Shown: positions 9,461-38,799 of the stretch, one piece after another | Layout of the letters: every line of letters starts with the position of its first letter | Numbering within the stretch: the first letter of the stretch is position 1 | Assembly: GCA_051294905.1 (NCBI GenBank) | Contig: CM119385.1 | Span: 21,204,001 to 21,268,000 of the forward strand | Source of the DNA: Botryllus schlosseri | Lineage: Eukaryota | Reading direction: 5' to 3' | Length of the DNA: 64,000 nucleotides | The notes under the pieces: model-generated | Told to the model about the DNA's origin: nothing | Databases searched by the model: none | Seen by the model: only the letters and a program-made list of their open reading frames with translations | Position numbers and translations under genes: made by a program

Positions 9461-10058
9461 TAGGGCTGTTCAAAAATAGCTTTCTTTTCAAATTTTACTG
9501 GCTGCTTCATAAAATTGTTAGTTTGCGTAAAAAAAAAACGCCAAACACCAATTTTTGCTCAATTCCAACCTATAGAAGCATTGCTATAAGAGTAAAATGA
9601 TTTTGATTATTAAATAAATATACGTATAAATTTTTTTTCAAATTTTACAGGCTACCCCATGAAATTGTTAAGTTGCCTAAAAAAACAATGTTTTATTTTA
9701 AAATTTGGCACAATTCCAACCATTGGAAGCGAAGATACTCTATTACAAAATCTACGATTTGAAACCCACCGTAAACCTTATATTTTCAAATCAAAAATTT
9801 TCGACTACAATAATTTCACTTCCACTGGTTGGAATTGCGCTGAATTTTACGTATATTGTTTTGCTATATAACCCAACAGTTCCGTGGGGTAGTCAGAAAA
9901 AATTGAAAAAATTTATTTTATTCAATAAATCTAAAAAATTTTCTCTGAAAGTAATGCTTCTATGTGTTGGAATAGAGCCAAAAATTGGTCTGCAGCGTTT
10001 TCTTCAGACAACCAACAATTTCATCAAGTAGCCAGTAACATTTAAAAAAACAGCCCCA
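9461..10058. mobile_element. hAT MITE family A copy upstream of the EFTUD2 start codon
   Basis: tagggctgttcaaaaat ... aaaaaacagcccca; imperfect 8 bp flanks ttgtgcag / ctgtacag. Confidence 0.75.
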
Positions 10059-13572: not shown

Positions 13573-16498
13573 ATGGATAAGCCTCAAATAATTAGTCACA
13601 TTGAAAAGTCGCTGGATTTCACGCTTTTCGACTGCAAATGGATACCGCGAAGCGCCAGATTTGTCGTTCTCGGCAGTTACCCGCGAGGAACGGGAGCGTT
13701 GTTGGTGTACGAGATATCACATCGTGATATAGTTAAGATTCACGATCGTGAAACTACTAGCTCTTTGAAATGTGGAACTTTTGGAGCATCGTCTTTACAG
13801 GTAAGATTTACGACTGCACTGTATTACGTCAATGTCTAGGCAATAACGAATGAATTGGTAGGCTACATCAGTAGTACATTTTAATTTGTAACTTTGATAA
13901 TACGCACCACATGAGAATGTACAAGAGATGGTCAAAGCATCAGCATTGCTGTGAATCCTACTGAAACTTGATACGTTTTGCCTAATAAAGCAGTTGCTAG
14001 CAGCGATGATTCTCCAAGTAATTTTATAAAAATTAATAATAAAGTAAAGAATTGTGTGAGCACAGGACATTGATTGCAGGGCTGTTGCTCGAGTATAAGT
14101 AAATTTAAGCACTAACCAGTATATAAAGTACTTTAAGTTGAAGTAAAAGTCTGGAAATTTCCCAAGTAAATAATTTGGAAAAGTAGATTTGGTCCATATG
14201 TCAAATACACTACAAACAAAATAGGACAAAGTCAGTCTCATATTTTTTACATTAGGATGATTTAGTCTCATTTTCATCAATTTGACTGAGACTGTTTAGA
14301 CTGAGACTCTATAGAATTGTCATGATAATTCGGTCTTCAAAATAAGACCGTCAGTAAATGCACCTATTAGGACATTTTTCGATTTATCAGTGTTTTTGGT
14401 CTTGTTTTTGAGACAAATTTTGCTAATCAAGAAATAACCTGGTCGGTGGTCTTGAAATTGTGACCGTAATGTTGTCATGAGACAAGAAAGCTAGACATAA
14501 CTCTCTTATTGAGACAAATTTTGATGCTTCAGTTTTTTTTGGCTTGTGTTTAAGACGAATTTTGCTAGTCAAGAAACATTGAGGTCCCTGATCAGCTGAT
14601 CTTGAAAATTAGACCGGAAAGTTGTCTAAGATAACAACACAGAACACAACTAGCTTATTTACAGTGTTTGATGCTTCAGTTTGTTTTATCTTGTTTTTAT
14701 GACGGATTTTGCTAGTCTCATATACTTTTAGTATAGTGAATCAAAGGTGGGCTACTTTCGAGATTGCAATGTGAAGTGTTTCTACAACACAAAACATCTC
14801 GTGACACTAAAAATAGAGCAATAGTTTACAATATATACTGTTATCATTATGCATGGACCATTTTGTGCAGTTGTCGTCATAATTTCACTCATTAAAAGAC
14901 GCAAACCAATCTCAAAACTATTTTCAACTTCAGGAAATATATTTACAATTTTTTTAGTTTCACGTCAAAAAGTATTGAATAGAATAGCCGAAAAATATAG
15001 CCACTTTTGTAACTTGTGAAATCAGATAAACCTACTTTAGTATTGGAATATTGGTTCTTGTTTGGCAGTTCTGATCAATGAATACGGTATCGTAATTGGT
15101 GTATTACTAATTGAATGTTATATATCCTGTACTGAAACATTCTGGCTTTTGATATTCTCTCCGTACAATAACGTCATTATTGTTGCTTGTACATTCTGTA
15201 TTTAGCTAATCTTATCCAATTTATTCATTCGTTCACGAAAAAAAACTAAATTAATTTCAAACTCAAAGGGAATAATTCAAGTTGAAGCTGTTGGTCTGCA
15301 TGTGCACGCTAATCGATATTGAGCCTGTTCGGCGTCTCAAATCTTGATACAGTTTCACTCTTTGTTATTGTTTGTTATTTTTCTAACCTTTTTGAGTTAG
15401 TCTAGTTACCGTACTGTACTTGTTTCATGGATATTACATTCGCAAATATCTATAACATATCGGCCTGTGTATGACTGCAATGTTACCAGCTGCCTTGATG
15501 ATCTAATGGCCATATTGGAGGCTAACATTTCACTGAATTATTTTCTCTTATTGTCAATATACAAAGTTCTTTTCAATTCTCTGCTAGTTGCTGACGATTA
15601 CTCCTGACGAGCGTCGGCCAAGAATATTTGTGTCTATTTCAAAACGAATATATTATTATGTCTTCAGTCAAGAAACCTCGCAACTGGAGACTTCTCCGGC
15701 AAGCTCAACGTCTGGGATTTGGAGTCCATGCAGAGCACGTACACGGCGTCGGCTCATTCTCAAATAATAAACGCAATCGACGGCGTTGGCGGATTAGGAA
15801 TTGGCGAAGGAGCGCCGGAAATTGTAACAGGCAGCCGAGACGGATGTGTTAAAGTCTGGGACGTACGCCAAAAAGATGTTCCAGTTGCTAATATGGAGCC
15901 AGATGAAGGGCAAGAAGCGAGGGACTGTTGGGCGGTTGCGTTCGGTAATGCATACAATTCAGAAGAAAGATGCGTATGCGCTGGTTATGATAATGGTGAT
16001 GTAAAGTTGTTTGATCTGAGGACCATGTCGTTAAGATGGGAGACTAACATTGCTAACGGCGTGTGTGCTGTACAATTCGATCGTAAAGACATAGCAATGA
16101 ACAAATTAGTGGCTACGTCTTTAGAAGGGAAGTTTCAGGTCTTTGATGTCCGCACGCAGCATAAAACAAAAGGCTTTGCGTCCGTTTCGGAAAAAGCACA
16201 CAAGTCGACAGTGTGGCTCGCGAAACACCTTCCCCAAAACCGTGACGTCTTTATGACCACCGGGGGCTCGGGATCGCTGAATTTGTGGAAATACGAGTAT
16301 CCGGCCAAAAGGGTGAAATTGGAGGATAATGAACACGTGGGTGTGGCGGGGTCGGTTCAACTTCTGCAGAACGCGGTGATATCGACGCAGCCAATATGCG
16401 GATTTGATTGGAGTCCGGATAAACTGGGTTTGGCTGTTTGCGTCGCGTTTGATCAGTCTCTACGTGTTATTATTAATACAAAGCTAAATACATTGTGA
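13573..16498 (+). CDS. WDR92: WD repeat protein 92 / dynein axonemal assembly factor 10; two exons, 352 aa
   Basis: Exon 1 13573-13800 ([12 protein letters not shown]...[11 protein letters not shown]|gtaaga) and exon 2 15668-16498 (cag|SRNLATGDF...[15 protein letters not shown]...WSPDKLGL...TKLNTL*); phase-0 join. Confidence 0.96.
14380..14720. repeat. Degenerate tandem repeat (about 140 bp period) in the WDR92 intron
   Basis: Repeated ttttgcta(a/g)tc blocks, with gatcttgaaa and gatgcttcagttt each seen twice. Confidence 0.5.
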
Positions 16499-19847: not shown

Positions 19848-20942
19848 GTACCGACGTTATGTAGACGATACTTTTGTCATTTTCAGAAATGAGATAGACT
19901 GTGATCAATTTCTCATTCACTTAAACTCGCTTCACCCGGCTCTGTTATTCACAATTGAAAAAGAACGGAATAACTCATTGTCATTTTTGGACGTTTTAGT
20001 CGAAAAACATGATACCAATAAATTTGAAACATCAATCTTCCGGAAACCGACATTCACTGGCCAATACCTTCGTTGGAACTCATTTAGTCCTAGCCGCAGA
20101 AAAATCAACCTCATAGGCACCCTCGTGCATAGAGCGTTGATGATATGTTCTGGTAATAAACTGAACTCAGAACTTGACAATATCCGGAAAATCTTACTTG
20201 ATAACGGTTACCCTGAACATGTCATCAACCGTGGCATAGAGAGGAAAGTAACGTATTTCAATGCAGAAAAGTCAACAGAGCCTACCGAACGAACAACCAA
20301 AGATGTTTACATCCATCTACCTTGGATAGGGCCTATTTCCACCCGCTTTGAAAAGCAATTGATTTCAGCGGTCAATAAGTGTTACGACACAGTGAAGACC
20401 AACGTGATTTTCACGACAACGCAACTGCTCCCCGCAACACGTAAAGACGTGCTACCCGCACTTCAGCAAAGCAATGTAGTTTACGAATTTAAGTGCCACT
20501 GTGATTGTGGCTACGTGGGAAGAACGTCAAAGCGCTTGCAGGAACGCATAAATCAGCATGTCCCTAGATTGATTAGAACACGCTCGATGAAAAGCTCACC
20601 CTTAACTCACCCGCTCAAGATTGATGCGGACCAATCAAAGGCCATAAATTCTGCAATTGGCAAACACTTGTTGGATAATCCCGCCTGTGCGAAAAATTAT
20701 CGAGACGACAGATTTCGCATACTCGGAAAGGGTCGCTCACACTTTCATTTGTGCTCCTTGGAGTCGACTTTTATCAAAATACACCAGCCAAGGCTGTGTC
20801 AACAAAAAGAGTTCGTGTATCATCTAAAAATAGTACATTGAACGCTCTCGTATTCGACATTTCGTGCTGGTGACGTCATATTTTGTGTTACGATTGTTGA
20901 TATACGCTGTTCTTTCGAATTCTCTACTAGTTGCTGACGATT

Positions 20943-22771: not shown

Positions 22772-25700
22772 ATGTTTGGTTACGTTCCTGCGATCCTGAC
22801 CCTTATGGTCGTTCTTACTAGGGCTGATGAAGAAATTCAGTATGAAGACGATGTTATGGTTTTGACCGATAGCAACTTCGACTCAGCTGTTGAAAATAAC
22901 AAGTACCTGCTCGTTGAATTTTGTAAGTGTTAATTTTTTCTATAAAATTGTAGTTTTCAGCGTTCTGCCTTGCTATCTCGAGAACTGTCATACATTGTCA
23001 TCAGACAGGAACGGTCATTGCTTTTGTTAGAGATGATCTTTCGTATATAATTAGTAATTTTACGGCGCTGCTTTTGCGAGTCCTGTGACGACTATAGTTG
23101 TCAACCACTAGTGTGGATAACTTTCAAGGTTTGAAGCGGAAAAACTGGAGTATTATTCCATATGTAATGTGCTAATGGAACTTGTATAGAATATAATTAT
23201 CCACAATAGTAGAGGCCGTGTCCATCAGTTGCAATGTAAATGTGTCATCCTTCGGTCGGATTTATGTTGGTCTGGATGTGATAATCACCCTTGCCTTAAT
23301 AACGCAGGGCTATTTTAATTTTTTATGATTGCTAGACGAATCTTAAGAGTTAGAAGCGTCTTTCAACCAAGCCTCGATTAATTTTTTACAATTTATTTAC
23401 AATGACTGTATTTGCATACTACATTTTTAAGACAAAATACATAGTGATTGATGTAACTGAAATTATACCAATTCTCTACGCACGACGTAGGTTTCATGAA
23501 GCTCAATGCATAGGCTACATTATTAGTCGAGGATGTATCCCAGCTCTTGAATCTTTGAAATTGACACCGTACTAATGATTTTTCAAACCCACGCATGTAC
23601 ATTGTACAGCTATAAACGCGTTGGCATGTGCAATGTTGCAATAACTTTTAGGTTAAGCCTTCGTACTGCTCGTTTGTTCTGCAACCTAATGCTGGAACTG
23701 TTATAGAGAAACCAGAATGTTAGGCACACCGAATTGTGTCATTTTGCAATGCCAAGAGTGGGCACACTTAATGATTAAGCCATATTGCCCTAACAAATCG
23801 TACACTTGCCCAGCTTTTTGATCGCTAATCTAATGATGATACCTGCAAAAAGTTTAGCAGATTTTGTGTTAATTAGGCATTAAACAATTGCTGGTATTCA
23901 GATATATAGAACTTCAATATACAATTGGCTAATAACTATTAGTTGCTGACGATTACCACTGAATGCCGAAAATATCGCGGTTCATTTTATTATGGATATC
24001 TTGATGTACATTGCTGTAGGGTTGTCCTGATAACTTTACACGATGGCACTGTGACTGAAAGTTTAGATTTATGTGCGAAAGTTACACCACTTATCTACGA
24101 TTAGAGACACTTAGGAGTACAGAACATCATAACACATTTGAATAAAATATTCATATTTATTCCCGAAGCTGGTCGGCTGACCCTTGTCAGGGGATATCGT
24201 CAGCAGTATTGCGAGAATTCGAATAACTATGTTCAACAACAATATATATCGCTAATTATGACGTCACACAGAAATATACGATTGTATTCATACCGTATCA
24301 TGTAATTGAACATCATCTCTGGGGCGTGCGAATGCGGCAAATTTTTTCAAGATATTTTGCACTTGTCAGTTACAAGTTGACACACGTGACATTCTCCAAT
24401 AGTTTTGGAAATGAAGTGATCATAATTTCTTATATTCGTTGAATTGTCATGGTCTATTACTGTTTTCTAGGTACCTTATGTTCAATTACCGGTAACCTAC
24501 TATAGTATAGGGGTTTGTCACATGGTTCTTATGCTGATTTCATTCGTAGGTGTTATGATATAAGCTTATCGCAAAGCTATTTTCTACTTCCATTGAGATA
24601 AATTGTAAAATGTAGAAGTAGGCCTAGAAGAAGAATTATTCCAAAAACATAGGCCTGTCCAATTTGGCATTGGCAACATTGACAAAATAGATGTACCGTC
24701 GTGACCCTTGTTTATGATATAGCCTATAGGCTACTTTCAGAACCGTTGTTATAACAAAGTATAGGGTGGCTGTAAATTCAGTTCCTGATTAGTCTCAGAA
24801 TTGATTTGAATCGTTAGTTCTATTGATGATTAGATGCCCCATGGTGCGGACACTGCAAAGCCTTGGCACCCGAGTATGCAAAGGCCGCAGGACAGCTTAA
24901 AGAAGATGGGTCGGAATCAAAGCTAGGCAAAGTTGACGCTACAGTGCAACAAAAACTGGCATCGAAATATAAAGTACAAGGATATCCAACCCTTAAATTT
25001 TTCAAGAACGGAGTCCCTCTTGAATACCAAGGTATGTGTTATCTTCTGAATAAACTAACATGATCCTTTCCACTATAGATTCGGATTGGTGTGAGCATTG
25101 TCCCGAACTGACAAAGGTACTTGTTGGCTTGGCTAAGCAATTCAAGAATGAAAATCATAATGTGACGATTGCCAAAATGAATGGCGGTATTCATAATGAA
25201 ACCGTGGAGAGAGTGAAGCTAGCCGGGTATCCCACTCTCCTGCTATTCCGAAAAGACAGAGTGTGGGAATTTATGGGCAAGAAATGTGTTCATACACTGT
25301 AGCGCAGTGCATGTTGGGAATTTCGAGTGTGAGAGGTCAAAGGATTACCTGGTGTTGATAGTTTGCAGTAGTGTACCCATGGTGTAAAATTGAATAGATT
25401 CTGTCTGATGTATTATGATCAGTTTATATTTTTCTATCGCTGATATTCTGGTTGCCGCATGCTGTGTGAGCTAGCATTGCCAACACCTATCAAACTAAGT
25501 GAGGGTTGTTGTGTTAAAAGTTATTCGTTTCGTACATCCAAACTTGTGCAGACTACTGGATTTTCAGAATGTGAAAGTAGGACTAGAACTACTGACTTTT
25601 CAAAACTCGCAACTAAAACTAGAACCAGCGACCTTTGAAAATCTGCAACTAAATAACTAAAACACTTTTAACGAGATTCAATTCTAAACCAACTTGAAAA

Positions 25701-28700
25701 TTATTATTCATTCGGAATCTGTGTGACTTTGTTGCAAATTAGCTAGGAAATATTGGCGATAGGGTGTGTAGTTAAAAATGGGAGCGCTTTTGACCCACAA
25801 AAGCCACCCCCTCACTACGCCACTGTTGGTAGTGATGATTCTCAGCTAGCAATGGCTGCAACTGACATTTTATGAATATGTTATTAGAACTAAAACTACC
25901 CCGTTTTAAATACCAAAACTAAAACTACTCAAAAATCCACTAGTTAGTTGACCGTCAACTAAATATATGGTAACGTGGTAGTTTGTACGAGTCTGAACAC
26001 GTACCTTATGGTTGGGTTGGTGTTTTAGGTGAAATATCATCAAGTTCTGTCAGAAAACATCCCCTAATTTAGGCTTGAAGTCTCGTACGATATCAAGTGT
26101 TTTGAGAGGCTCTCGTAGCTACTTTTGGTGTTCGCTTGTGTGCCGGGTTGAGGGTCTTCGTTATATGGTGGAATGTTTGCAATATGTTTGTATACAGGAG
26201 GAAGAACTGCAAGCGAAATTGTCAACTGGCTTGCCAAGAAAACTGGACCTCCTTCGAAGGAAATCGCGACCAAAGAGGATGCGGACAAATACATCGCTTC
26301 CGCTGATGTTGTTGTCCTTGCCTACTTTGTGAGTATGCTCTAAGCATCTCTGCTCAAACTGCTGGATTTTCAAAATGTGCAACCTTTTCAAAACTCGCGG
26401 CTAGAACTAGGACTAACTTCCTTTGAAGATACACAATCGACTAACTAAAAGCAGAACTAACTGTTATTCGATTACAATGCAACTCGTTCGGGTGGGATGT
26501 TGGAGATGGAATCAAGGCTTCGAGTTTTGAATCGAACTACCCTGAACCCCACCCATGGCTACGTCAATGTCTGCAAGAACATCACACAATAGAACACCTT
26601 TATCAATATTCTCTAATGTTCTCTAGTTGGTTAGAAACTAAATTTTTTTGAATGTGCAAATGGAACTCGAACTACTCACTTTTCAAAATCCACAATCAGA
26701 ACTAGACGTAGCCTACTCAAAAACCAGTAGTTAGGTGACCGTCAATTGCCAAGATTGGTCGTTTGTGCAAGTCTGCAAATATTGTTGTTTGCGTCTGATT
26801 TCATGTCTAACACTGCTTTCCAGAGTGGTGAATCTGAGGAACAGAAAATGTATTTGGAAGTTGCGGATTCCGTAGACGACGTGTCGTTTGCGCATATCAC
26901 AGATGCTGGCGTAGCCGGAGAAGTCGGCATTAAGGATAACCAAATAGTTGTTTTCAAGAAGGTAAGTTTTACGCATACTTCCGTCCAGAGGTGTTCATTA
27001 ACGTAGTACTCCAGTACGTTTTGCAAACTTTGACCGCTGAATAATGAAGTATGGACTGTTAAGTTGACGCGACAACATTATAGCGATCGTTTGATTAACA
27101 TAAATCTGCTTAATAAATGAGTTGGCCTCGTGAATAGGTTTTAAAGATAACATGGCTATAGACCTGGAGTACTAAATTTTTAATTGCTTTGAATCGCTAC
27201 TTCTGCAGTTCTGCTTGAGTGTAAATTTTCGGCATTATTTCTACTTCTACTCGATTACCAATGGTAACTACTTCAACCACCCCATGTTCCAGTCTGGTCC
27301 ATCTTATTTTACCCAATTAACTTCTTTTAATTAACTTGCTTGTATCACTCTGTGCCGATCTAAGGAGGAGGCCGGTAATTGTACTTTTGCCGGAAATGGC
27401 ACTGACCACGGTCAATTGGAGTCGTGGGTCCTAGACCGGACTTGGTTGTTCATGCAAGAGCTTTGCGAAGAGGTATTTTATGGTCTGGATTGGGTAATAG
27501 CGGGGCGTGGGGTTTGTAGGTGTGTGCGGTCTACGGTTTATCCAGTGCTCGAAATATAGCGGTACTGTTGGGTTTTAGCGGTAATGGTATCGCATGCTTT
27601 TTTTGAAGTTTGACGAAGAACGTGTAGATTTCGAAGGCGAAGCGAGCGCCGATGCGATCCGCGATTTCGTGAAAGGAAACCAGCTTCCGTTGGTTAGCGA
27701 ATTCACGCAAGAGGTGAGTGTGACGTCACATTTAAAACGAAACGAACGGAATTTCTATCTCACGAGTACAAGGCATCGGATCAAGCGACGTTTCCCAGAT
27801 AGGGTATATTGTGGATGGAGTGTGGCGTGCGGTTTTAGAAGCTTAGCTTTTTAGGAGTGGGTGCTGCATAAATTCATAAATGTCGGTGTGTAACTTATCC
27901 ACGTTGCTAGATAGTGCTTTAGGGTAGAGAGCTTCAATATACAATTAAAAATAAATACAGGCGGGGGGGCATAAAAAACGTTTAGTCAACTACATTTCAT
28001 TAACTGTTTGGTGCAAAGTTCAATGTGAAAAGAATCTTGAGAGGTACAGAAATTTATATACATTTTATACAATTGAATATGTTCATTAAAATATATTCGT
28101 ATATCTGGTAATCGTCAGGAATCGGTAGAGGATTGAAAAGAACATTGTATGTCATTAATATCACCAATCGTATGAATCATATTTGGTGAGATGATTGTTG
28201 TTATACAATGTTCTTTTCAATTCTCTCCTGATTACCCCTACCGAGTGTCGGCCGATGATATTATGGTTTATTTCAATTTGAATCTATAACTCTTGTACAT
28301 ACCTAATCGGATTAATCGAAATTCCTCTCCAACTTAGTTTAAAGCCCGTGGATTGGTCGCGCATCGAGAAATATGGTGTTGGGTGTATCGCTTTGTTTGC
28401 CGGTGATTGATGTGTTGTTTCGTTCGCAGTCTGCTGCCAAGATCTTCGGCGGAACCATCACGACGCACAACTTGCTGTTCATCAAGAAATCCGACAGCGC
28501 ATTCCAGCAGACGTACGACGATTTCAAGAAGGCCGCCGCCGAATTCAAGGGCAAGGTATTATATATAGTCAACTGGATGCTTCTGATTAGGGCCCGGCAG
28601 TTTTTGAGTCGATAACGATAATGCATGAAATAATTTGCACCTTCGCCAATAACCTTCAGCCGCAATTCGAATTCTATGACATCTAGCTTAAGACTAATTT

Positions 28701-31700
28701 TCAATACTATGTGGAGAGTGGAGCGTTCATTTGAACAGCTTTAGAACCATTACTGTGGTTGGACGTAAACGAGATCATTTCTTGTCCATGTACATTAGGG
28801 GTGTTCAAAAATGACTTTTTTTCTCAAATTGTACTGGCTACTTGATGAAATTGTTAGGTTACCAAATTTAAGCCTACACCCCCAATTTGGTTCAATTCCA
28901 GCGAGTAGCCGCATTGCTACAGGAGAAGAAAGTTTCTATTTATTATTTAAAAATAAATAAACAAAAATTTCAGTTCACCCCATGAAAGTGTTAGGTTGTC
29001 TATAGAAACGATGGTTGGAATTGAACATTCCAACCAGTGGAAGCGGAGTTATTGCCGTCGAAAAATTTGGATTATCAATAAAATAGTATTTACGGTGACC
29101 AATTCTTTAATTATTTGTTAGTTGTGCCCACCGTAAATACTATTTTATTCACATCCAAATTTTTCGACGGCAATAACTCCGCTCTCACTGGTTGGAATTG
29201 AGCCAAATTTGGTGAACATCGTTTCTATAGACAATTTAACCCTTTCATGGGGTGAACAGAAAATTTTGAAATTTTTGTCCATTCATTTTTATGTAATAAA
29301 TAAAAACTTTCTTCTCCTGTAGCAAGGCGGCTACTGGCTGGAATTGAACCAAATTTGGTGTGTAGGCTTAAATTAGGTTACCCAACAATTTTATCAAGTA
29401 GCCAGTAAAATTTGAGAAAAAAAGTCATTTTTCAACGCCCCTAATGCACATTTCCTAATTGTGAGCTACTCAATCGCAGGTCCTGTTCATTTACATCGAC
29501 GGCGACAACGCCGAGAACGAGCGGGTCATGGAATTCTTCGGGCTGACGGCCGCCGACTGCCCGGACTACAGGATCATAAAGATGGACGAGGACATGGCCA
29601 AGTACAAGCCGGAGACCAAGGCGCTAGACGCCGAGTCTGTGATCGACTTCACCGGGAAGGTTCTCGACGGGAAAGCGTCGGTGAGTGTTGGCTGTATGGC
29701 GACGGTTTTGATTTAAATTGAATTAGGATCAGAATGATAGCTACACTTTTTTTCTGAATTAGATTTAAATTAGAATTATGGCTACAGTTTTTTTTTCAAA
29801 TATAGAATTATAGCTGCGGTTTTCTTTTCAAAGTTAGATAACAATAAGAATTGTCACTAGTTTTTTTCGAAATCAGATTATAATTAGATTTATAGCTGCT
29901 GTTTTCCCGAAGTGGGTTAGCATTACTGAATTCGCAAAATCTTGGAAATTGAATTCAACTCCGAATTAGGAAGAGATACGACAAAATAATGTTGAATTTG
30001 TATCAAATCAGAGTTCGTTGTCCTAAACATGTACATCGAGCTTGGCTCGTTTCGTACTTTACAGTTCTGGAAAACCACAAATTAGATTGGACAGAACATA
30101 AAAATATCTCGCAAATTAGGATTAGAGATTGATTACCGACATTTTGCTCTGCGAAGGGTTATTGAGATTTTTTTTCAACTTTCCAGCGTCACTTGAACTC
30201 GGAAGACATTCCTGAGGATTGGAATAAGAACCCGGTTTGTGTGCTTGTCGGAAAGAACTTCAAAGAAGTCGCTTTTGATGCCAAGAAGAAAGTCTTTGTT
30301 GAATTTTGTAAGTAGAGTCAACCGGTTTTGTCCCGTTTCGTCGGTTGCCAGTGAACTCGGCCCATAATCCTAAACCCGGCGCTTCTTAACCTGTACTAAC
30401 CTAACCCGAATTTACAGAACAAAACCATTAAAACATGATTTTCACACAAAACGAAATGATGATGAATATTCACTGCAAATCAGTACGACTTGTGCTGTAT
30501 GAGTCAGATATGTATCTTGATCGCCAGCAAACCCAGTTGAGAACCACCGTCCTAACTCTAGCCCAAATACATGAATACAGCAGGGTTGTAATGACTCGAG
30601 TCACGATTTTCTGATGACTCTACTTGACTCGAGTCATTTTTTCAAAATACGGAAATGATTCAATCTGTGTATTGACTCGACTTGGACTCGAGTCATTGCG
30701 CATGACTCTATCCAAGTCATGCGACTCGAGACTCAGACGGCCAAGACCGACATTTCATTGTGATTTTGAAGGATAGTAAAGTAACCTCACTATTGGGATT
30801 TAGCCTATTGGCACTGGTACTTGAAAATGCGACCAGAAACTGCTAAAAGTGAGGAAAATGAGTATATTATAAATGCGAACCATTCGATACCACCAGAGTT
30901 ATGAAAATTGGGTTTTAACGAGACTTTTACTGGACACTGAGCAGTCGATACAATGACTTAGACTCGGACTCGAGTCAAAATACCATGTCTTGAACTCGAC
31001 CCTCTGCTCGGTGACTTGGACTCGGACTTGACTTGAGTCAAAACTATAAAAGTGAGATTGACTTGCGACTCGCAGCCGTGGCCCTTGGTTACCACCCTGT
31101 AATATGTTAAACATACCAAGTGCCATGTATCCAGTGAAACGTTCATTTGCAAGTCTATCAATACAATATTTATGCATCTCTTTCATAATAATAATAATTG
31201 TTACATTTCAAATGACAAATTCACAAAGTGCCGTCTATCACAATCCGCTCTCATATTCAGTGAAACATTGATTTATTAATACAATATAGATGCACCGTTT
31301 TCATCACAATAATAGTTATTACAATTCTAATGACAAATTCATGATCATATTCAGTGAAACATTCATTTTTATTAATACACATTGATGCATTGTCTTCATA
31401 AGGATAGTAGGCTAATTACATTCATATTGTCAAGTTCACTGGTAACTATTTCGCCGTCTGCGACTAAAACGTATCAATTCCGTGTCACAAAGCTAGGCAC
31501 AATTCTAGTGGTTCTTATTCACTTGAAATCTCACCCGGCTAATCCGCTTTAAATCTGTGGGCTTTATAAGATATGGCTTGGGTTAGTTATTGGTGTCTCC
31601 AGATGCTCCGTGGTGCGAACACAGCACGCGCTTAGCGCCGACATGGGAGGCTCTAGCTGGGAAAATGAAGGATAGGACGGATCTGGTTATCGCCAGAATA

Positions 31701-34700
31701 GACGGCTCGAAAAATGATGTGTCCGACGTTCACGTCGTCGCGTTCCCGACGCTGCTGTATTTTCCGAAGTCAAAAAAGCCAAAAGTGAGGGTGATGATCG
31801 TAGACCTTCAATCATCATGCCTGCTTACATCATGACCTCATTTATCGCCGGTAGTTGTTTTTGCGGTCGGGAGACATACGAGCATGCGACACTTAGCATG
31901 TGTGTTCAATTTTTTATTTGATTTGCTCTAAATCTGTTGGGCATGATTATAATCAAGGCATGAGGTTCTGAATCGCAAGTCATTGTTACTTTTTTGATCA
32001 AATTTTACTTGATTAAATTGTTCGGTTGCCTTGAAAAATGGTTCACACCAATTTTGGCTCAATTCCAACCTTTGGAAGTATTGCAGTATGAAAAAAGTTT
32101 TATTTTTTCAATAAAAATAAATATAAATTTTTTTTATATTTCACTGGTTTCCTCGTGAAATTGTTACGTTGTCTGAGCAAACGATGCACAACAAATTTGG
32201 CTCAATTCCAACCAGTAGAAGCGAAGTTATCGATGTTTAAAATTTAGGATTTCAAATCATAGTATTTGCGGCGCGTAGATCTATAATAAATAAAGAAATT
32301 TGCCACCATGAATATCATTTTTTTGAAATCCAAAATTTCGCACTCCGATAACTTGCTTTCTACTGGTTGGAATCGGGCCAAATTTGTTGCGCATTGTTTT
32401 TCGGAGAATCTAACAACTTCATGGGGTACCCAATAAAATATGGAAAAAAATTTGATCATTTTTATGAATCCAAAACCTTTTTCATATATAGCAATGATAA
32501 GTTGGAATTGAACCAAAAGTGAGGTCCAGCGTTTTTTTTTAGACAACTTGACAGCAATTTTTTCAAGTTTTATCGAGTCAATGTGCAATGACTGTAGTAG
32601 AAGCCTAGTTCATACACAAAGTGTCTAAAGTTGAGTCATTTTCCGTCCCTGGTGATCTGAAATCACCTGCGGTTAGGGTAGGGGTGAGAACATATATACG
32701 GGTTCAGAGTTACTGTTTGGGTTAGTTTTGGAGTTATAAAGTCACATGCTAAAATGCCGCGTGCTCTAATGTCGGGCGACCGTACTTAGCGACGTAGAAT
32801 AATACGAGCAGTGATTATTTGCGTCGGCCGTTGTCATGTAGTTGCCACGTTGTTGCTTTAGACGCGCCATGGTGCGGGCATTGCAAACAACTCGCCCCGA
32901 TCTGGGACAAGCTTGGAGAGCACTACAAGGACAACGACGATATCGTTATCGCCAAGATGGACTCTACCGCCAACGAGGTGGAAGAAGTCAAAGTGACTGG
33001 TTTCCCGACGTTGAAATATTTCCCCGGCGGTGAAGATAATGTAAGGAGAGAGTTGTTTGCATGCACGTGTTTTTCTTGCTAGATTGTAGCGCCGGAATGT
33101 GTATACTGTAGTCAGCATTGCTACTCGTGTAGAAGTGGGGCTGTAAATTTCTTGTCATTTACACTTGGAAATAGTAAATTGAGCAGCTTCTATACAATTG
33201 AATAGTATATTCATATTGAAATGAACACGAATATTTTCGGCTGACACTCGTGACGCTCGGTGAAAATCTCGAGATTGATGCGGAACAATCAAAGGACATA
33301 ACTTCTGCAGTTGGCAAACACTTGTTGGATAATCCAGCCTGTGTGAAAAATTATTGAGACCACAGATTTTTCGTCGTCGGAAGGGGGCCGCCACACTTTT
33401 ATTTGTGTGCCTTGGAGTCGACTTTTATCAAAATACACCAGCCAAGGCTGTGCCAACAAAAAGAGTTTGTGTACCACCTAAAAATAGTACATTGAACGCT
33501 CTCTCATTCGAAATTTCATGCTTGTGACGCCATATTTTGTGATACGATTGTTGATATACAATGTGCTTTCCAATTCTCTATACTAGTTGCTGACGATTAC
33601 CCCTGACGAGTGTCAGCCGAAAATATTTGGGTTCGTTTCAATCTGAGTATGCTATTCAATCAAATAGTAAATTCTAAGACATGTCCAAACTATTTGGAGT
33701 GTTGCTACTTGAGTAACGCCTTGAATTTCTGCTTAATGACAGACAGAAATAATAAATTCCAAGACCTGTCCGAACTGCTTTGATTGTTGGTGCTTGGGCA
33801 GAAGTAGAAGTAACGTCTTAAATTTCTATTTGATTACAAATAGAAAGTGATATTCGAGACTTAGCAAGCTCAGCGACAGGTGAAAATTACCCGGAGCAGT
33901 AGAAATAATGCACTTTTTCTTGACCATGACCGCCGACTCGTGTGCTTGTGAATTCTTGAAACTTTAATTTCATTTCTAATTTTTCCCAGGTAATTGATTA
34001 CAATGGCGAGAGGACGCTGGAAGCCATGATCAAGTTTATCGATTCTGACGGCAAAGAAGTAAGTGGCGAGGAAGAAGATGAAGACGTAGATGAGGTGTGT
34101 AGTGGTAGATGTGATATTTCGACTTCAACTAGGGTTGGACACAATGATACGGGTAAAATGGAGTGTTGATTGTAATGATGCAGATTGAGAAGTGAGAGAT
34201 TATCTCTTACAGTGCTGAAATTACAAGCTAATTGCTACTAAGAGTTCATTTATCAACTACATTTATAGTTCCGATACTATTTTCCACTGAAAGTCTTATA
34301 GACTATGATTGGTCGTATCGCAAATGGCATGTATGTGAAGCTAGTGACAAACCCACAACATTGTCGCAAAGTGTAATGAAATAAGGTATGGTCAGTAATA
34401 TACAAAATAATCTTTAATTTGATGTGGAATTGGCACTATATTCTCTGTGGTTGCGTAAATGGTACATTTTCAACTTTACACATCATTCGTGAGGTCATGA
34501 TTACTGGTACTGGAATACTGTTCATTGCGGTGCAGATGATTTGGAAAGTTGTGACGTGTACCTTGGATACACCACGTTGAAACTTTTCTGAACAATTTCG
34601 TTGTTGAGCGTGGGGCTTGGTCACGTCTTCACAGAATGCCACGTGTTTTGGATGGCGTGATCTGGCCAATTGAGATTTCAAGTTTTCAGTGATTGTCGAA

Positions 34701-36963
34701 AAGTATCAAAACTATAATTCCAGCACTCGAAAATTTACTTGACGGAAACTTTGTTGTTGATACGGCTGATCGAGATTTCAAGGCTTCCACAATGGGAAAA
34801 AACATTAAAACTATAATTTCAGCACTCGAAGATATCATGTTGCCAGTGTTTGATTCGAATCACTACAATAAATACTCAGAACTCGAATCACTGTGACCAG
34901 CCTTAGACCTAACCCTGTTGTCGCCAATTGATTCTCAAAAAGGCCTCCCACTCTCGAGTGGTATAAATCCTATGCTCGGGCAGGCTTAGTCGCGGGTCCT
35001 TTTTTCCTGCGAGAAGTCGAGGTATGGTCGGTGATTTTAGACCGTTGGGGTAGTAGAATGTCGTAGTCGAACCTCCCAAATGTTCTTGCATGTTATTGAA
35101 TTTGGAAGGTTACAAAATTGTACTTTTGTACACCTACTTTGTAGTACGGAGCCTAGGTTTTTGTGTGGTAGCCGCCAAATCGTTCAGACTCTTGGCGGGT
35201 TGTGAAACTAGCGGTTGTCTTGCAATGCGCACAGTAGCGGTGACGGTATACAGCTTGAAGTGTGGAGGAAACGGAAGAAAAGAACTGATAGACATCTCAG
35301 AATGCGCACGGTAGTCGTGATAGGTATGCGGTTGGAAGTGTGGAGAATGTTTGTAGAAACGGGAAGGGAAAGTGTGTTGTAAGGTGGGGGGGAATATTGG
35401 TGCTGTAGGATGGGAGACGTATGAAATTATGGAAAGAGTACGTTTAGATTGTTCCCATGAAAGATGGCGCCGCGCCTGGCATGTGCCTGCCGGGAGGGGC
35501 CGCGTATTTTGACAACCATCACGACGACGCCGACACGTTTCACATCGCCGACATGAACCTGCCCAAAGCAGAGTTGTTGTCTGATTCTGCGGGTGTGGGG
35601 ACGGAAGAAAAAGCGTCTAATAATGCCGGTAGTTCTGCCGAGAACGTGCAAGGGAAGGCTACGGCCGGCGTGGTAATTGGTGTGAAGTGAATAGGTTGAC
35701 AGGTTTCGTTGGCGTTGCATGGTTAGCGAGTACTAGCGAGACTCTCAGGGGTGCAGATCTTCAATATACAATTGAATAATATATTTGAATCGGCTGTCAC
35801 TTGTAAGGGGTAATCATCAGCAACTAGGAGAGAATTGGAAAACAAAACTGCTTATTGAAGATTTGAATCGATTTTTACCCGATAAATGCTGGTAACGTCA
35901 TTTTGGCGGTACAGGCCTTCAAAAAGCCAGCGTATACTTGATCCGAACGAATCGAATTTCGAAAATATCCTACTCTAAATAGGTGCAGAACTAAAGTACA
36001 ATGGAATATTCAATCCTCTCCTAGTGGCTGACGGATAACCCGTGATGAGTGTTGACCGAAAAGTTTCAGGTGCATTTCGGTACGAATATACTATTCAGTT
36101 GTTTAGCAGGTACTGTTTTCCTATATGCGAAGGGGTGGTGTAAATGTGTGCAGTGGGCATGCGAGATTTGCAATGTGTATTGCTGAATATCACGTTGTTT
36201 TTAAAGGACGGTGCCGACTATGTAGCTGAAAAACCAGGCCAAGGGGTGGGAGATGAGAGTAGCAAGGATGGCGAATCGAAGAAAGCTGCGTCTGCGACAG
36301 ATAAAGCAGAGGCAGGCCCTGTGGGCAGAGATGAGCTATAGGTTGCCGTACTTATGACCGTTACGAGCTTTGATATTTGAAACAGTAGAGATCACACGAG
36401 GAAAATGCTAGTCCCTGTATAAGTGCAATTTTAGCCCATTTGAAAGTTCCAAGTATGGAAATGTGCATCTGTTGCCGTGCTCACAAGAAAATCATGCCAG
36501 TTATGCATCACCGGAATTAGTTTCAATGTATCTAAACCAAAATGATATCCGAGACCGAGAGGTCGTGATCAACCCACAACATTGTCACAAAGTGTCACGG
36601 AATGATACACAACTGGCATTATATTTTTGTCGTCGCATGTAAGGTACATATTCAACTTTCCGTATCAGTCACACTGCTATGGCGCCGTAATGAATGACAC
36701 TCGAATATATCATGTACTCGATTTTGCTCAGCCCTATTGCTGATCCATATTCCCGAGAAGTAATGGCCCTGATGTTTGCGAGATCCCTGACTTCGTGTCT
36801 GACATTGCATTGATACCTGACAACTTCGTGCATGGGAAATGACCGCGTGTAAAGTGTTTGCTTATAAACGCGATCCCTTGTTCAGGAGGAAATTGACGAG
36901 GAAGACGAAGACCAAGAGCAGGAAGAAGAGGAATCTCACGCGGACGCGAAAGACGAATTATAA
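22772..36963 (+). CDS. P4HB: Protein disulfide isomerase (P4HB/PDIA1 type), canonical isoform 510 aa ending in KDEL
   Basis: Exons 22772-22922 (signal peptide...VEF), 24834-25031 (YAPWCGHCK), 26198-26328, 26824-26961, 27609-27713, 28430-28555, 29480-29680, 30187-30307, 32862-33040 (YAPWCGHCK), 33990-34094, 36886-36963 (...ADAKDEL*). Total 1533 nt with all phases consistent; a-b-b'-a'-c architecture. Confidence 0.96.
25079..25276 (+). CDS. Alternative PDI a-domain exon (2b) with WCEHC motif
   Basis: Open frame (Y)[65 protein letters not shown](G); 198 nt, the same length and phase as exon 24834-25031; ctatag acceptor and GC-type donor G|gcaaga. Confidence 0.8.
25539..25995. mobile_element. 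MITE family D; second copy at 26345-26775 on the other side of PDI exon 3
   Basis: Inverted termini caaacttgtgcagactac / gtagtttgtacgagtctg and shared ttttcaaaa(c/t)...aactagaac subrepeats. Confidence 0.6.
28796..29443. mobile_element. Nearly fully palindromic hAT MITE (family A) in a PDI intron
   Basis: taggggtgttcaaaaatgac ... gtcatttttcaacgccccta; left half is the reverse complement of the right half; 8 bp flanks atgtacat / atgcacat. Confidence 0.9.
30581..31099. mobile_element. MITE family B copy in a PDI intron
   Basis: cagggttgtaatgactcgag ... ttggttaccaccctg; collinear with 8049-8628. Confidence 0.8.
31603..31784 (+). CDS. Alternative PDI a'-domain exon (9a) with WCEHS (CxxS) motif
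   Basis: Open frame (Y)[60 protein letters not shown]; ctccag acceptor and gtgagg donor; 182 nt with the same phase 1 to phase 0 boundaries as the canonical 179 nt exon 32862-33040. Confidence 0.85.
33181..33661 (+). mobile_element. Short Penelope derivative with inverted arms in a PDI intron
   Basis: 12 bp direct repeat aaatagtaaatt (33169-33180 and 33662-33673); decayed GIY-YIG C-terminus ([17 protein letters not shown]...[27 protein letters not shown]) plus terminal repeat. Confidence 0.9.
35448..35672 (+). CDS. Candidate alternative PDI exon (75 codons) preceding the RDEL exon
   Basis: tttag|[40 protein letters not shown]...GKATAGV|gtaatt; phase 0-0 and GC-rich coding-like composition, but the polypyrimidine tract is weak. 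Confidence 0.6.
36207..36341 (+). CDS. Alternative PDI terminal exon ending in RDEL
   Basis: gttgtttttaaag|[44 protein letters not shown]; phase 0, with an ER-retention tetrapeptide directly before the stop. Confidence 0.8.
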   Translation, partial: DGADYVAEKPGQGVGDESSKDGESKKAASATDKAEAGPVGRDEL

Positions 36964-38799
36964 ACATTGTGTGGTTCACTACTGCCCATCAGATTTGTTT
37001 CAAATGCACAATCGTGTAAAGCCCCCGGTCCTGTTCTTCCCACGCGTTCGCTATTGAAACTGTGAAGCAGCATAGAGCGCCTTAGGTGATGTTTCTTTTC
37101 TTTCTGGTTGATGAAGAAAGCAGTAAATAGTTTAGTAGAGATAATTTAAAAATCTGAACTGCAATTACTTTATTCTACGTGCCTGCTAAGTCTGTTTTAT
37201 TTGTGTAAATGTGTTGGTCTTTTTGTGTGCCAAGTTTCCTGTCTTGATGCTGAAAATATGACCCTATGAAATGGATTTTGGTCAGTTGAAGTGTGTGCCA
37301 GGGTTGTTTCGAGTGGTCGGACACTCGTAAATGCGAGACGTTCTGATAGAATCACCGTGATCCAAAGACTTGACGGCAGCGATATGCTATTTCTAGAACC
37401 TGTGGGTATGTTCAGTTGACACTTGGACCTAAAATAACGCTCAGCTGTTATGTGTATAATGGTAGAATAGATACTAGTGTTTTACAACGATATGTCAGGC
37501 ATTGAGCATTTTATGCAGGTGGTCAACAACTGGAGGGCCGTGTCCATGTACCTCGTCTGGACGAAGACGGGTCATGGATACGGTTATTGAGTGACGCACC
37601 TGTGTCCTAGGACCTTTGCCTTTTGATATCGCTATGTTGTGGCCGGCGGCGCCTATCAAGTTGAACAATTGGACAATTTGAAGTTGGTGACCCCTGATCA
37701 CATGCGATAATAGAACTCGGTAACGAAACACAGACACGGAGCAAATTTGATTTGTTAGCAAGATGAAAACCTTTTGGGATAAAGGTAGGTTGTCGAGTTT
37801 ATTCCGAGTAATCTTCTAATCATACACCCGTCTTGGCATGGAATCTGTATCGGCGGTTCGCATTTTTTTAGAGACGGGAGACGAAAAACCTTGGGCAGTA
37901 GCAGTAGAGGTCTATATTTGAAATTACTTGGATATTATGTAGAAAAGTAAAAGGGTTGATTAAATCCTTAGGGGGTACGAAAATAGGCTAGGCTATGTTG
38001 AACTTGATGAGGGGGCGATGAGTCGAGAAGGTTTGCGAACCACTGGATGTAAAAGAACAGGACGATGACTGGGGCATGTATCGGTGGGAGAGGGCGATGT
38101 CATATCGTTGTCAGGTAATCTTCCGGGGTGTTTAGTATTGATGTAGTATACAGGGGTGGTCCGCGTGATAATTTTCTAAATTTGTTATATTTTCAAAAGT
38201 GAATTGCCCACGTAAAGGATGGTGAAGTTGCAAGTTTAACCAATACTTTGATTAGCCTGATAGCGAAATTTGAGATGTTGGTGACTATAAAAGCGATAGG
38301 TCCAAAGCATTGGCGTATAGCCGACTAGCCGTGTCCCCGCGTTTTTGTAAATCATTGTAAATTAACATGTTAGGTTTAGTATTTCTCGCCCGATTGATTT
38401 AAACTGATATTTTTTTCCTCGCGCCATTTTGTGTCTAGATTTATTGCTTTTAGGAACCTCCCAAATCCTCCGGAACCACGGCATAACTCGAGTCAATTCG
38501 GATGTAACGGTCTATAGCAGGGGCCGGCAACCCTGGCACGCGTGCCATTTTGGCGCGTGAGATGATTTTTCATGGCACTCCAAATGATTTGACGCACAAA
38601 ACATATAACGATATTTTTTTGCAAAAATTGAAACTGAGTTTCTTTTATGTACAAAGCAAAATTATTTCGTAAATCAACATAAAGTACGGTAGTCTTTTGG
38701 GGGCGATTTTATTTATCTAAGAAAATTTTCCGCGCGTGGCGCGATTGACTGGAACCTGATTTCTTGCTTATAATGTTGGAACCCTCAAAAATATATATG

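What the first reader, a model, noticed from the sequence alone, without database searches (positions are those of the whole stretch)
22772..36963. One PDI gene with swappable catalytic exons for both thioredoxin domains and two ER-retention tails
Seen in sequence: the canonical PDI (WCGHC twice, KDEL, 510 aa) has extra, fully open, phase-matched thioredoxin exons nested inside it. These are 25079-25276 (WCEHC) beside 24834-25031, and 31603-31784 (WCEHS) beside 32862-33040, plus a second C-terminal path (35448-35672 + 36207-36341) ending RDEL. Both alternative exons share G-to-E in the active site and PTLL instead of PTLK. They diverge strongly in protein sequence yet keep length, phase and no stops, which argues for purifying selection. 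Established: vertebrates obtain redox-attenuated PDIs from separate paralogs (PDILT, ERp44). Inference: this animal builds a paralog-like chaperone or retention PDI by mutually exclusive splicing on a shared b-b' substrate-binding core, giving up to 8 combinations or one coordinated 593-605 aa isoform. I am not aware of this being described for P4HB.
Basis: partly seen in the sequence, partly recalled or inferred. Interest (0 to 1): 0.92.

Follow-up and report, generated by a model that had tools for sequence, protein, structure and literature searches.

The report
PDI gene with conserved alternative exons
One protein-disulfide-isomerase gene carries spare versions of its two catalytic exons, a further spare exon and a second ER-retention tail; all are kept intact in a distant relative, so they are real coding exons, but the RNA sampled here barely uses them.

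Summary
The window holds a canonical 11-exon, 510-aa PDI gene (WCGHC twice, KDEL). Its introns contain a WCEHC copy of the a-domain exon 47 nt after the normal one, with a GC donor. They also contain a WCEHS copy of the a' exon and a two-exon alternative tail ending RDEL.

The syntenic gene of a distant relative (L001) keeps every module with the same splice sites, phases, 47-nt spacer and GC donor. Its second tail ends KEEL. Synonymous sites are saturated (pS about 0.75). The alternative exons have pN 0.18 (Fisher p 2e-26), so they are under purifying selection as coding sequence, not decaying copies.

RNA support is thin. In three bulk RNA-seq runs the canonical junctions have hundreds of reads. 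The alternative parts have a few reads, under about 1%, with only the t1>t2 junction seen. Exon 2b junctions were not tested, and mutual exclusivity and linkage between choices are inferred, not shown.

This is a new member of a known kind (tandem-duplicated alternative exons). I found no description of it for PDI. The scan's own notes list the same three sub-features on this window.

The parts
22772..22922 (+). Exon 1: start codon, signal peptide and the start of the a domain (...YLLVEF plus 1 nt). Constitutive.
   Evidence: It is conserved in L001 at 9406-9559.
24834..25031 (+). Exon 2a: canonical a-domain active-site exon (WCGHC, YPTLKFF). 198 nt, AG/GT.
   Evidence: Pfam Thioredoxin 73 bits. 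It is 88% aa identical in L001, with pN 0.076.
25032..25078 (+). 47-nt spacer between exons 2a and 2b, with a CTAAC branch-like motif about 27 nt from the 2a donor and 20 nt from the 2b acceptor.
   Evidence: The spacer is exactly 47 nt in L001 too, with GTATGTG, CTAA and ATAG at the same positions. The smallest real introns of the L001 gene are 58-64 nt.
25079..25276 (+). Exon 2b: alternative a-domain exon (SDWCEHC, YPTLLLF). 198 nt, AG acceptor, GC donor (G|GCAAGAAATG).
   Evidence: Pfam Thioredoxin 38.5 bits. Orthologues are P0001 (67% id) and L001 9960-10157 (63% id), both with the GC donor kept. pN 0.20 against pS 0.78, p 5e-12. RNA-run contigs hold its words, but splicing was not tested.
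26198..26328 (+). Exon 3. Constitutive.
26824..26961 (+). Exon 4. Constitutive, b domain.
27368..27472 (+). Exon 5b, newly found: a 105-nt, phase 0-0, AG/GT alternative exon ([35 protein letters not shown]). It has two Cys and two N-x-T sequons. It has the same length as exon 5 and lies 136 nt upstream of it.
   Evidence: It is the only other conserved intronic block between the window and L001. The alignment shows third-position wobble. pN 0.14 against pS 0.79, p 3e-8. Splice sites are kept in L001 10893-10997. Homology to exon 5 is not established.
27609..27713 (+). Exon 5: canonical end of the b domain and first strand of b'.
   Evidence: It matches human PDI b-domain chains.
28430..28555 (+). 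Exon 6. Constitutive, b'.
29480..29680 (+). Exon 7. Constitutive, b'.
30187..30307 (+). Exon 8. Constitutive, start of a' (...VFVEF plus 1 nt).
31603..31784 (+). Exon 9b: alternative a' exon (APWCEHS, FPTLLYF). 182 nt, AG/GT.
   Evidence: Pfam 36.9 bits. L001 12337-12518 is also 182 nt, with WCEHS kept and 69% aa identity. pN 0.18 against pS 0.70, p 2e-9. In X18, about one fragment lies on it with zero depth on either side; the X1 contig over it is unspliced.
32862..33040 (+). Exon 9a: canonical a' active-site exon (WCGHC). 179 nt.
   Evidence: The 33040>33990 junction has 290 reads in X18.
33990..34094 (+). Exon 10, with a minor internal donor at 34058 (GTAAGT).
   Evidence: The 34094>36886 junction has 386 reads and 34058>36886 has 10 reads in X18. 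The internal donor is conserved in L001.
35448..35672 (+). Tail exon t1 ([17 protein letters not shown]...). 225 nt, phase 0-0.
   Evidence: L001 13642-13881 has the same acceptor and a conserved first 21 aa. An in-frame stop lies directly upstream. The t1>t2 junction is seen in 2 X18 reads and 1 X1 contig.
36207..36341 (+). Tail exon t2, ending in RDEL-stop.
   Evidence: L001 14046-14171 ends in KEEL-stop. An X1 contig runs from 36206 past the stop to 36592.
36886..37275 (+). Exon 11: acidic tail with KDEL-stop at 36963, followed by the 3' UTR up to the poly(A) site near 37275.
   Evidence: Poly(A) loose ends occur at 37275 in X18 and X20.

Best explanation
This is one P4HB-type PDI gene on the + strand (22772-37275). 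It encodes the ordinary a-b-b'-a'-c enzyme and also carries four conserved alternative coding modules.

**The four modules**
- Exon 2b changes the a-site from CGHC to CEHC.
- Exon 5b is a Cys- and sequon-bearing version of, or insert at, the b/b' junction.
- Exon 9b changes the a' site from CGHC to CEHS.
- A two-exon tail, t1 + t2, replaces the acidic KDEL tail with a longer Gly/Ala/Ser-rich tail ending in RDEL.

**What is shown**
All four modules are kept as open, spliceable coding sequence under purifying selection in a deeply diverged relative.

**What is inferred about splicing**
- They are spliced in as alternatives to the canonical parts.
- Exon 2a and 2b cannot be joined to each other, because the 47-nt spacer puts the 2b branch point about 27 nt from the 2a donor.
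- The weak but conserved GC donor makes 2b the non-default choice.
- Using both or neither of 9b/9a shifts the frame to a premature stop, and skipping both exon 2 copies gives an immediate TGA.

**What is inferred about function**
The product is a minor, probably cell-type- or condition-restricted PDI isoform. It shares the substrate-binding b-b' core. It has a charge-altered a site and a single-cysteine a' site that can attack or hold disulfides but cannot itself cycle as an oxidase. It is still retrieved to the ER.
For: **Gene model**
- The gene model and all motifs are confirmed.

**Orthology of L001**
- L001 is the orthologous locus. The ankyrin and WD40 neighbours lie in the same order and are 71% and 93% identical.
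- Every exon, including 2b, 5b, 9b, t1 and t2, is present in the same order with AG/GT sites. Exon 2b keeps its GC donor and the spacer is again 47 nt.

**Conservation is limited to exons**
- Between the two species only exons align at the DNA level; introns do not.

**Selection**
- pS is 0.70-0.79 everywhere, which is saturated.
- pN is 0.20, 0.14 and 0.18 for exons 2b, 5b and 9b. Pooled pN/pS is 0.24, p 2e-26.
- A third species (P0001) keeps exon 2b with the first 24 residues identical and the GC-donor region intact.
- The tail sequence drifts, but its frame, its acceptor and a [KR][DE]EL stop are kept.

**Frame logic**
- The frame consequences of including both copies or neither were computed.

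**RNA**
- The spliced t1>t2 junction is seen in 2 reads and 1 contig.
- X18 reads fall on the alternative-exon bins and essentially not on the neighbouring non-repeat intron bins: about 8.5 reads against 0.7.
- Several RNA runs hold the words of exon 2b or 9b.
Against: - Direct transcript support is weak. No read-supported junction into or out of exon 9b, or from exon 10 into t1, was listed.
- The alternative parts are below about 1% of canonical depth in X18 and are absent in X20 and X22.
- The X1 contig over exon 9b is colinear with its introns, so it is unspliced.
- The X1 contig over t1 runs colinear from 34808, with no splice at 35448.
- Exon 2b and exon 5b junctions were never tested.
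- Exon 5b shows no significant sequence similarity to exon 5. It could be an in-frame cassette rather than a replacement.
- No protein containing the alternative exons was found in the protein libraries. Full-length spliced queries could not be submitted, so this is a limited test.
Confidence: 0.8

Rival explanations
1. The extra exons are decaying relics of old tandem exon duplications (pseudo-exons). They have no function and are skipped by the spliceosome.
For: Usage is very low or undetected in three bulk RNA-seq runs, and the contig over exon 9b is unspliced. Exon 2b has a non-canonical GC donor.
Against: - Exon 2b is only 26% identical to 2a and exon 9b only 47% identical to 9a. Both still score as Thioredoxin and keep Trp-Cys-x-His, the cis-Pro loop, their length and their phase.
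- In a relative with saturated synonymous sites and unalignable introns, all of them stay open. Their splice sites are conserved and pN/pS is 0.24, p 2e-26.
- The GC donor itself is conserved in three species.
Confidence: 0.03
2. The modules are conserved and transcribed but are not built into a full PDI. Examples would be a nested transcript that starts in the last intron and covers t1-t2, or inclusion events that mainly serve regulation of the gene's output rather than a distinct enzyme.
For: In X1 the contig carrying t1 is colinear with 640 nt of upstream intron, and depth steps up near 34800. The t1>t2 splice is seen without an e10>t1 splice. t1 has a conserved Met four codons in.
Against: - Constraint acts at the amino-acid level on catalytic-fold residues, which a regulatory exon does not need.
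- The t1 frame has a stop immediately upstream, and a product starting at its Met would lack a signal peptide. The conserved RDEL/KEEL would then be pointless.
- t1 conservation starts exactly at the acceptor, in the phase of exon 10.
Confidence: 0.1
3. The modules are used independently, giving up to 16 mixtures, rather than as one coordinated alternative isoform. Exon 5b is an in-frame 35-aa insert, stapled by its two terminal cysteines, rather than a replacement of exon 5.
For: - Runs that hold exon 2b words and runs that hold exon 9b words overlap only partly; X1 and X6 appear on both lists.
- Exons 5b and 5 are both 105 nt, so including both keeps the frame.
- Exon 5b has Cys at positions 5 and 33 of 35 and no detectable similarity to exon 5.
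Against: - Both catalytic alternatives share the same Gly-to-Glu and Lys-to-Leu changes, which suggests they work together.
- Exon 5b has exactly the length and phase of exon 5. Its hydrophobic pattern can be laid on exon 5's helix and strand, with a shuffle test p of 0.003 in L001 and 0.08 in the window.
- Word shares from low-coverage contigs are a poor measure of linkage.
Confidence: 0.3

Closest known systems
Mutually exclusive exons from tandem exon duplication, for example alpha-tropomyosin exons 2/3 (steric exclusion), FGFR2 IIIb/IIIc (frame/NMD), Drosophila Mhc and Dscam (several clusters in one gene). Surveys: PMC5740500, PMC6071210, PMC4165533.
   Same: - Adjacent homologous exons have equal or near-equal length and the same phase, and each has its own splice sites.
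- The donor-to-branch-point distance is under 50 nt for the exon 2 pair. Exon lengths are not divisible by three for the exon 9 pair. PMC5740500 uses exactly these criteria.
- As in insect Mhc, one gene carries several alternative modules plus an alternative C-terminus, where other lineages use paralogues. That comparison rests on my own knowledge.
   Different: - The affected gene is a PDI, and the swapped residues are the redox active sites of both catalytic domains.
- No PDI or P4HB case appears in the human MXE survey text or in my literature searches.
- Exclusive usage has not been demonstrated by reads here.
Canonical PDI / P4HB (a-b-b'-a'-c, two CGHC sites, KDEL).
   Same: The default product of this gene is exactly this: 510 aa, two WCGHC sites and KDEL. 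Its b-domain exon matches human PDI structures.
   Different: The gene additionally encodes CEHC and CEHS active-site exons, exon 5b and an RDEL tail.
PDI-family paralogues with a CXXS or otherwise attenuated site: yeast Eug1p (CLHS/CIHS), ERp44 (CRFS), PDILT (SKQS/SKKC). This entry rests on my own knowledge.
   Same: In the alternative a' exon a single N-terminal cysteine remains in the active site on a PDI-like scaffold, and ER retention is kept.
   Different: - Those proteins are separate genes. Here the variant would be made by splicing on a shared b-b' core.
- The a site keeps both cysteines (CEHC).
- No sequence relationship closer than about 40% to any such paralogue was seen for exon 2b.

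Membership tests
PDI (P4HB-type) | Two catalytic thioredoxin domains with CGHC that flank non-catalytic b-b' domains. | tested here: met
   The 510-aa splice product has WCGHC in exons 2a and 9a. Pfam Thioredoxin scores 73 and 60 bits. Exon 5 matches human PDI b-domain chains.
PDI (P4HB-type) | An N-terminal signal peptide and a C-terminal KDEL-type ER-retrieval signal. | tested here: met
   Exon 1 has a hydrophobic N-terminus. The canonical product ends in KDEL-stop and the alternative tail in RDEL-stop. No signal-peptide predictor was run.
Mutually exclusive exon pair (tandem duplication) | Neighbouring exons are homologous, of the same or similar length, and in the same reading phase. | tested here: met
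   Exons 2a/2b are 198/198 nt and exons 9b/9a are 182/179 nt. All four hit Pfam Thioredoxin over the same profile positions. For 5b/5 the length and phase are equal (105/105 nt), but homology is not significant, so that pair is inconclusive.
Mutually exclusive exon pair (tandem duplication) | Both copies have functional splice sites and are conserved as coding sequence. | tested here: met
   AG/GT sites (GC for exon 2b) are conserved in L001. pN/pS is 0.18-0.26 for the alternative exons.
Mutually exclusive exon pair (tandem duplication) | A mechanism prevents joint inclusion or joint skipping. | tested here: met
   At sequence level only. The 47-nt spacer places the branch motif about 27 nt from the donor, in both species. 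Including both or neither exon 9 copy gives a premature stop, and skipping both exon 2 copies gives TGA at the junction. Nothing of this kind exists for 5b/5.
Mutually exclusive exon pair (tandem duplication) | Mature transcripts contain exactly one member of the pair, and each member is seen in some transcripts. | tested here: inconclusive
   Only the canonical junctions are well supported: 290 and 386 reads. Exon 9b has about one fragment and no listed junction.
CXXS-type PDI-like proteins (Eug1p / ERp44-like function) | An active site with only the N-terminal cysteine, on a thioredoxin fold, in an ER-retained protein. | tested here: met
   Exon 9b reads WCEHS in both species. With the RDEL/KEEL tail the product would be ER-retained. 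This is a functional resemblance only. It does not show common descent with those genes, and activity was not tested.

The most novel reading that the evidence does not exclude
The four modules are chosen together. One gene would then make two distinct enzymes: the housekeeping CGHC/CGHC-KDEL PDI, and a rare 'paralogue-by-splicing' with CEHC and CEHS sites, an altered b/b' junction and its own RDEL tail. The choices would be coordinated over 12 kb of pre-mRNA and conserved across a deep divergence. This would be the PDI counterpart of the insect single-gene myosin heavy chain system. It would also be a natural experiment on what the Gly of CGHC and the second cysteine of a' are for.
Probability: 0.3. 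Interest if true: 0.75.

Novelty: new member of a known kind. Interest (0 to 1): 0.62.

Why it matters
PDI-family diversity, meaning oxidase, isomerase and thiol-retention functions, is normally explained by gene duplication. Here a lineage appears to obtain a PDI variant by swapping the active-site exons of both catalytic domains, and the ER-retrieval tail, on a shared substrate-binding core.

Selection has kept a CEHC site and a CEHS site over a long time. These are therefore ready-made, evolution-vetted variants for asking how the residue before His and the resolving cysteine tune PDI chemistry.

For splicing, the exon 2 pair is a compact model system. It has an exactly length-conserved 47-nt spacer and a conserved GC donor, so steric exclusion and weak-donor control can be tested in a minigene.

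The cross-species comparison also shows how a missed alternative exon (5b) can be found by intron-level conservation.

Tried and rejected
**Searches that led nowhere**
- A protein search with the exon 9b ORF found nothing.
- A profile of the three exon 2b orthologues found no further species.
- The exhaustive representative search with exon 2b gave only P0001 and P0050 as specific hits. All other hits were generic thioredoxin domains at 24-40% identity.
- The contig of P0001 could not be fetched as DNA.
- Two degenerate-pattern scans of metagenome contigs, one for the exon 2b motif and one for the exon 9b motif, found nothing.
- Literature searches for PDI with mutually exclusive or duplicated exons, and for WCEHC or CEHC, gave no relevant paper. 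A search for the run accession SRR25569784 also gave none.

**Ideas tested and dropped**
- I first considered the conserved block at 27366-27481 as an intronic snoRNA. An Rfam scan gave no credible hit (best E 0.77, far below the gathering score), and the third-position substitution pattern shows it is coding.
- A profile comparison of exon 5 against exon 5b found no similarity.
- Pfam finds nothing in exon 5b or in the tail exons.
- I built an alignment with a full-length PDI as first row, to get round the length filter. I did not use it, because the fragments aligned badly and the ranking would have been dominated by ordinary PDIs.
- A GT donor 9 nt downstream of the GC donor was rejected because it gives TGA at the junction with exon 3. 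This follows from the sequence.

**A wasted call**
- One promoter/terminator scan was irrelevant.

Full report
**1. What is in the sequence**

I assembled the gene from splice-site-bounded exons:

| Exon | Coordinates |
|---|---|
| e1 | 22772-22922 |
| e2a | 24834-25031 |
| e3 | 26198-26328 |
| e4 | 26824-26961 |
| e5 | 27609-27713 |
| e6 | 28430-28555 |
| e7 | 29480-29680 |
| e8 | 30187-30307 |
| e9a | 32862-33040 |
| e10 | 33990-34094 |
| e11 | 36886-36963 |

This gives a 510-aa PDI with two WCGHC sites and KDEL.

Four features lie inside its introns.
- Exon 2b (25079-25276) reads SDWCEHC...GYPTLLLF. It has an AG acceptor and a GC donor and starts 47 nt after e2a.
- Exon 9b (31603-31784) reads APWCEHS...FPTLLYF, with AG/GT sites.
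- Exon t1 (35448-35672) is the first tail exon.
- Exon t2 (36207-36341) ends in RDEL-stop.

All four catalytic exons hit Pfam Thioredoxin over the same profile positions. The alternative ones score lower, at 38.5 and 36.9 bits against 73 and 60.

The duplicates are old. Exon 2b is 26% identical to 2a, and exon 9b is 47% identical to 9a. DNA identity is 48% and 57%.

**2. An orthologous locus in a distant relative**

Exon 2b was used for a word-indexed protein search and an exhaustive representative search. Together they returned just two specific hits among roughly a thousand generic thioredoxin matches.
- P0001 is 99 aa and 67% identical.
- P0050 is 77 aa and 56% identical over the part it covers.

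Both are ORFs called on genomic Logan contigs of other species. P0001 keeps [24 protein letters not shown] unchanged, and the residues that correspond to the GC-donor region.

P0050 gave DNA: locus L001. L001 is the orthologous locus. The single-exon ankyrin gene and the WD40 gene upstream of the PDI gene are in the same order and orientation and are 71% and 93% identical.

tblastn and blastn show every window exon in L001, in order.
- Exons 2a and 2b are again separated by exactly 47 nt.
- Exon 2b again has G|GCAAGAAG as its donor.
- Exon 9b is again 182 nt with WCEHS.
- t1 has the same acceptor and begins [17 protein letters not shown].
- A t2 exon ends in KEEL-stop.
- All splice dinucleotides are conserved.

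**3. A fourth module**

Outside the exons, only one intronic block aligns between the two species: window 27366-27481.

Its substitutions fall on every third base. It is bounded by AG and GT in both species. It is 105 nt in phase 0-0, exactly like exon 5, which lies 136 nt downstream.

It encodes [35 protein letters not shown]. Two Cys and two N-x-T sequons are conserved.

Rfam gives nothing credible there. I call this exon 5b.

Its similarity to exon 5 is not significant. The shuffle test gives p 0.08 in the window and 0.003 in L001, and hhalign finds nothing. It may therefore replace exon 5, which encodes the end of the b domain and the first strand of b'. Alternatively it may be an in-frame insert.

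**4. Selection**

Nei-Gojobori counts between the window and L001 give pS 0.57-0.91, pooled about 0.74. Synonymous sites are therefore saturated, and neutral sequence should be unalignable, as the introns are.

| Exon or set | pN | Fisher p against its own pS |
|---|---|---|
| 2a | 0.076 | |
| 9a | 0.049 | |
| Constitutive exons | 0.116 | |
| 2b | 0.196 | 5e-12 |
| 5b | 0.14 | 3e-8 |
| 9b | 0.18 | 2e-9 |
| 2b + 5b + 9b pooled (pN/pS 0.24) | 0.18 | 2e-26 |
| t1 | 0.38 | 2e-5 |
| t2 | 0.49 | 0.1 |

Because pS is saturated, the pooled ratio of 0.24 is an upper bound on omega.

The alternative catalytic exons evolve about three times faster than the canonical ones, and about as fast as exons 3 and 4.

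In the tail, t1 is constrained mainly in its first 21 residues. t2 is near neutral in sequence (p 0.1), yet it keeps its frame, its acceptor and a [KR][DE]EL stop.

The exons are present, in frame and far from dN/dS = 1 in a relative.

**5. Exclusion logic, from sequence**

*The exon 2 pair.*
- The 47-nt spacer carries a CTAAC/CTAAT motif at the same position in both species. That is about 27 nt from the 2a donor and 20 nt from the 2b acceptor.
- The shortest true introns of the compact L001 gene are 58-64 nt.
- PMC5740500 counts a donor-to-branch distance below 50 bp as potential steric interference.
- Retaining the spacer gives a stop. Skipping both copies gives TGA at the e1/e3 junction.

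*The exon 9 pair.* Using both or neither copy shifts the frame to a stop. This is the NMD-type mechanism.

*The 5b/5 pair.* Nothing in frame or spacing enforces exclusivity.

**6. RNA**

Only one lay of at most 6,000 bases was allowed. I chose 31400-37300, which covers exon 9b, 9a, 10, t1, t2 and 11. I used X1 (contigs) and X18, X20 and X22 (raw reads).

*Canonical junctions in X18:*

| Junction | Reads |
|---|---|
| 33040>33990 | 290 |
| 34094>36886 | 386 |
| 34058>36886 (internal donor) | 10 |

*Alternative parts:*
- The t1>t2 junction (35672>36207) is seen in 2 X18 reads and one X1 contig.
- X18 depth is 1.55 on exon 9b, 1.1 on t1 and about 1.5-2.4 on t2, against about 216-316 on the canonical exons. 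That is under about 1%.
- X20 and X22 show none.
- In X18 these reads sit on the alternative-exon bins while 13 non-repeat intron bins are essentially empty: about 8.5 reads against 0.7. A rough binomial test gives p about 0.003 when counted by fragments. This fits rare processed transcripts better than pre-mRNA.

*Cautions from X1:*
- The contig over exon 9b is colinear with its introns.
- The contig over t1 is colinear from 34808.
- The 'holds it' results therefore do not prove splicing.
- Junctions of exons 2b and 5b were not examined.

**7. How it most likely works**

Shown: conserved, selected alternative coding exons and a conserved second ER-retrieval tail.

Inferred: the default pathway uses the strong 2a, 5, 9a and e11 sites. 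A regulated pathway uses 2b (weak GC donor), 5b, 9b and t1-t2.

The following points rest on established PDI chemistry and on the sequence.
- The alternative a domain keeps both cysteines, the His, the cis-Pro loop and the Lys of the buried charge pair. The Glu of LVEF and the Arg of GGR are supplied by the shared exons 1 and 3.
- It should therefore remain redox-active. A Glu next to the nucleophilic cysteine is expected to change its pKa and redox potential.
- The alternative a' domain (CEHS) cannot form the intramolecular disulfide. It can only attack or hold substrate disulfides, as in CXXS-type PDI relatives.
- The tail loses most of its acidic character, from net charge -23 over 40 aa to -12 over 119 aa. 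It gains a conserved Cys-containing start.

Whether the modules are chosen together is unknown.

**8. Comparison and novelty**

Mechanistically this is tandem-exon-duplication alternative splicing, a well-known kind. The multi-module layout resembles single-gene isoform systems such as insect Mhc (my own knowledge).

I found no report for PDI/P4HB in the searchable literature or in the human MXE survey text. No representative protein carries an exon 2b-like segment other than the two genomic ORFs. I could not check whether the species' own annotation already predicts such an isoform.

The scan's own first-stage notes list the three sub-features on this same window and many other candidate exclusive exon pairs elsewhere in this genome.

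**9. Verdict**

- I put the probability that these are functional coding exons of PDI isoforms at about 0.85.
- I put the probability of coordinated use at about 0.3.

Noticed in passing
window 34058 (inside exon 10, 33990-34094): A minor in-frame alternative donor (AAAGAA|GTAAGT), conserved in L001, is used with the canonical last exon. It has 10 reads against 386 for the main donor in X18, and it removes 12 acidic residues.
   Followed up: partly
window 33190-33667 (also about 32179-32399, 35734-35930 and 36522-36718): A foldback/MITE-like element with 62-nt inverted arms lies in the e9a-e10 intron. Its RNA depth is far above the PDI exons in X1, X18 and X22, with opposite-strand joints and joints to sister copies. 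It looks like a dispersed, expressed repeat family.
   Followed up: partly
window 37275: The poly(A) addition site of the PDI mRNA shows as loose A-runs in X18 and X20. No AATAAA or ATTAAA lies between 34867 and 37959, so a variant signal must be used.
   Followed up: no
window 11611-12687 (-) and 15719-16498 (+); L001 4029-5108 (-) and 6590-7360 (+): A single-exon ankyrin-repeat gene and a WD40 ORF lie upstream of the PDI gene and are syntenic with the relative (71% and 93% aa identity). The relative's locus is several-fold more compact; its PDI gene spans about 5 kb against 14.5 kb here.
   Followed up: partly
window 19978-20841 (+); whole window: A 287-aa ORF has a weak GIY-YIG match, consistent with a Penelope-like element. 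An Rfam scan of the whole window at gathering thresholds found no family at all, so no hammerhead ribozyme reaches the curated score, despite the first-stage note s1-286634.
   Followed up: partly
window 32998, 33001, 33025 (exon 9a) and 34037 (exon 10): X1, X18 and X20, the runs with depth there, read a different letter from the reference at these four places (half of X1's contig depth at 34037), and X22's few reads at 34037 agree. All four are third codon positions, so they are probably strain or allele differences at silent sites.
   Followed up: no
window 31591: The X1 contig has a 9-nt insertion (GGTGTCGCC) 12 nt upstream of the exon 9b acceptor. This is an indel polymorphism in its polypyrimidine/branch region.
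   Followed up: no
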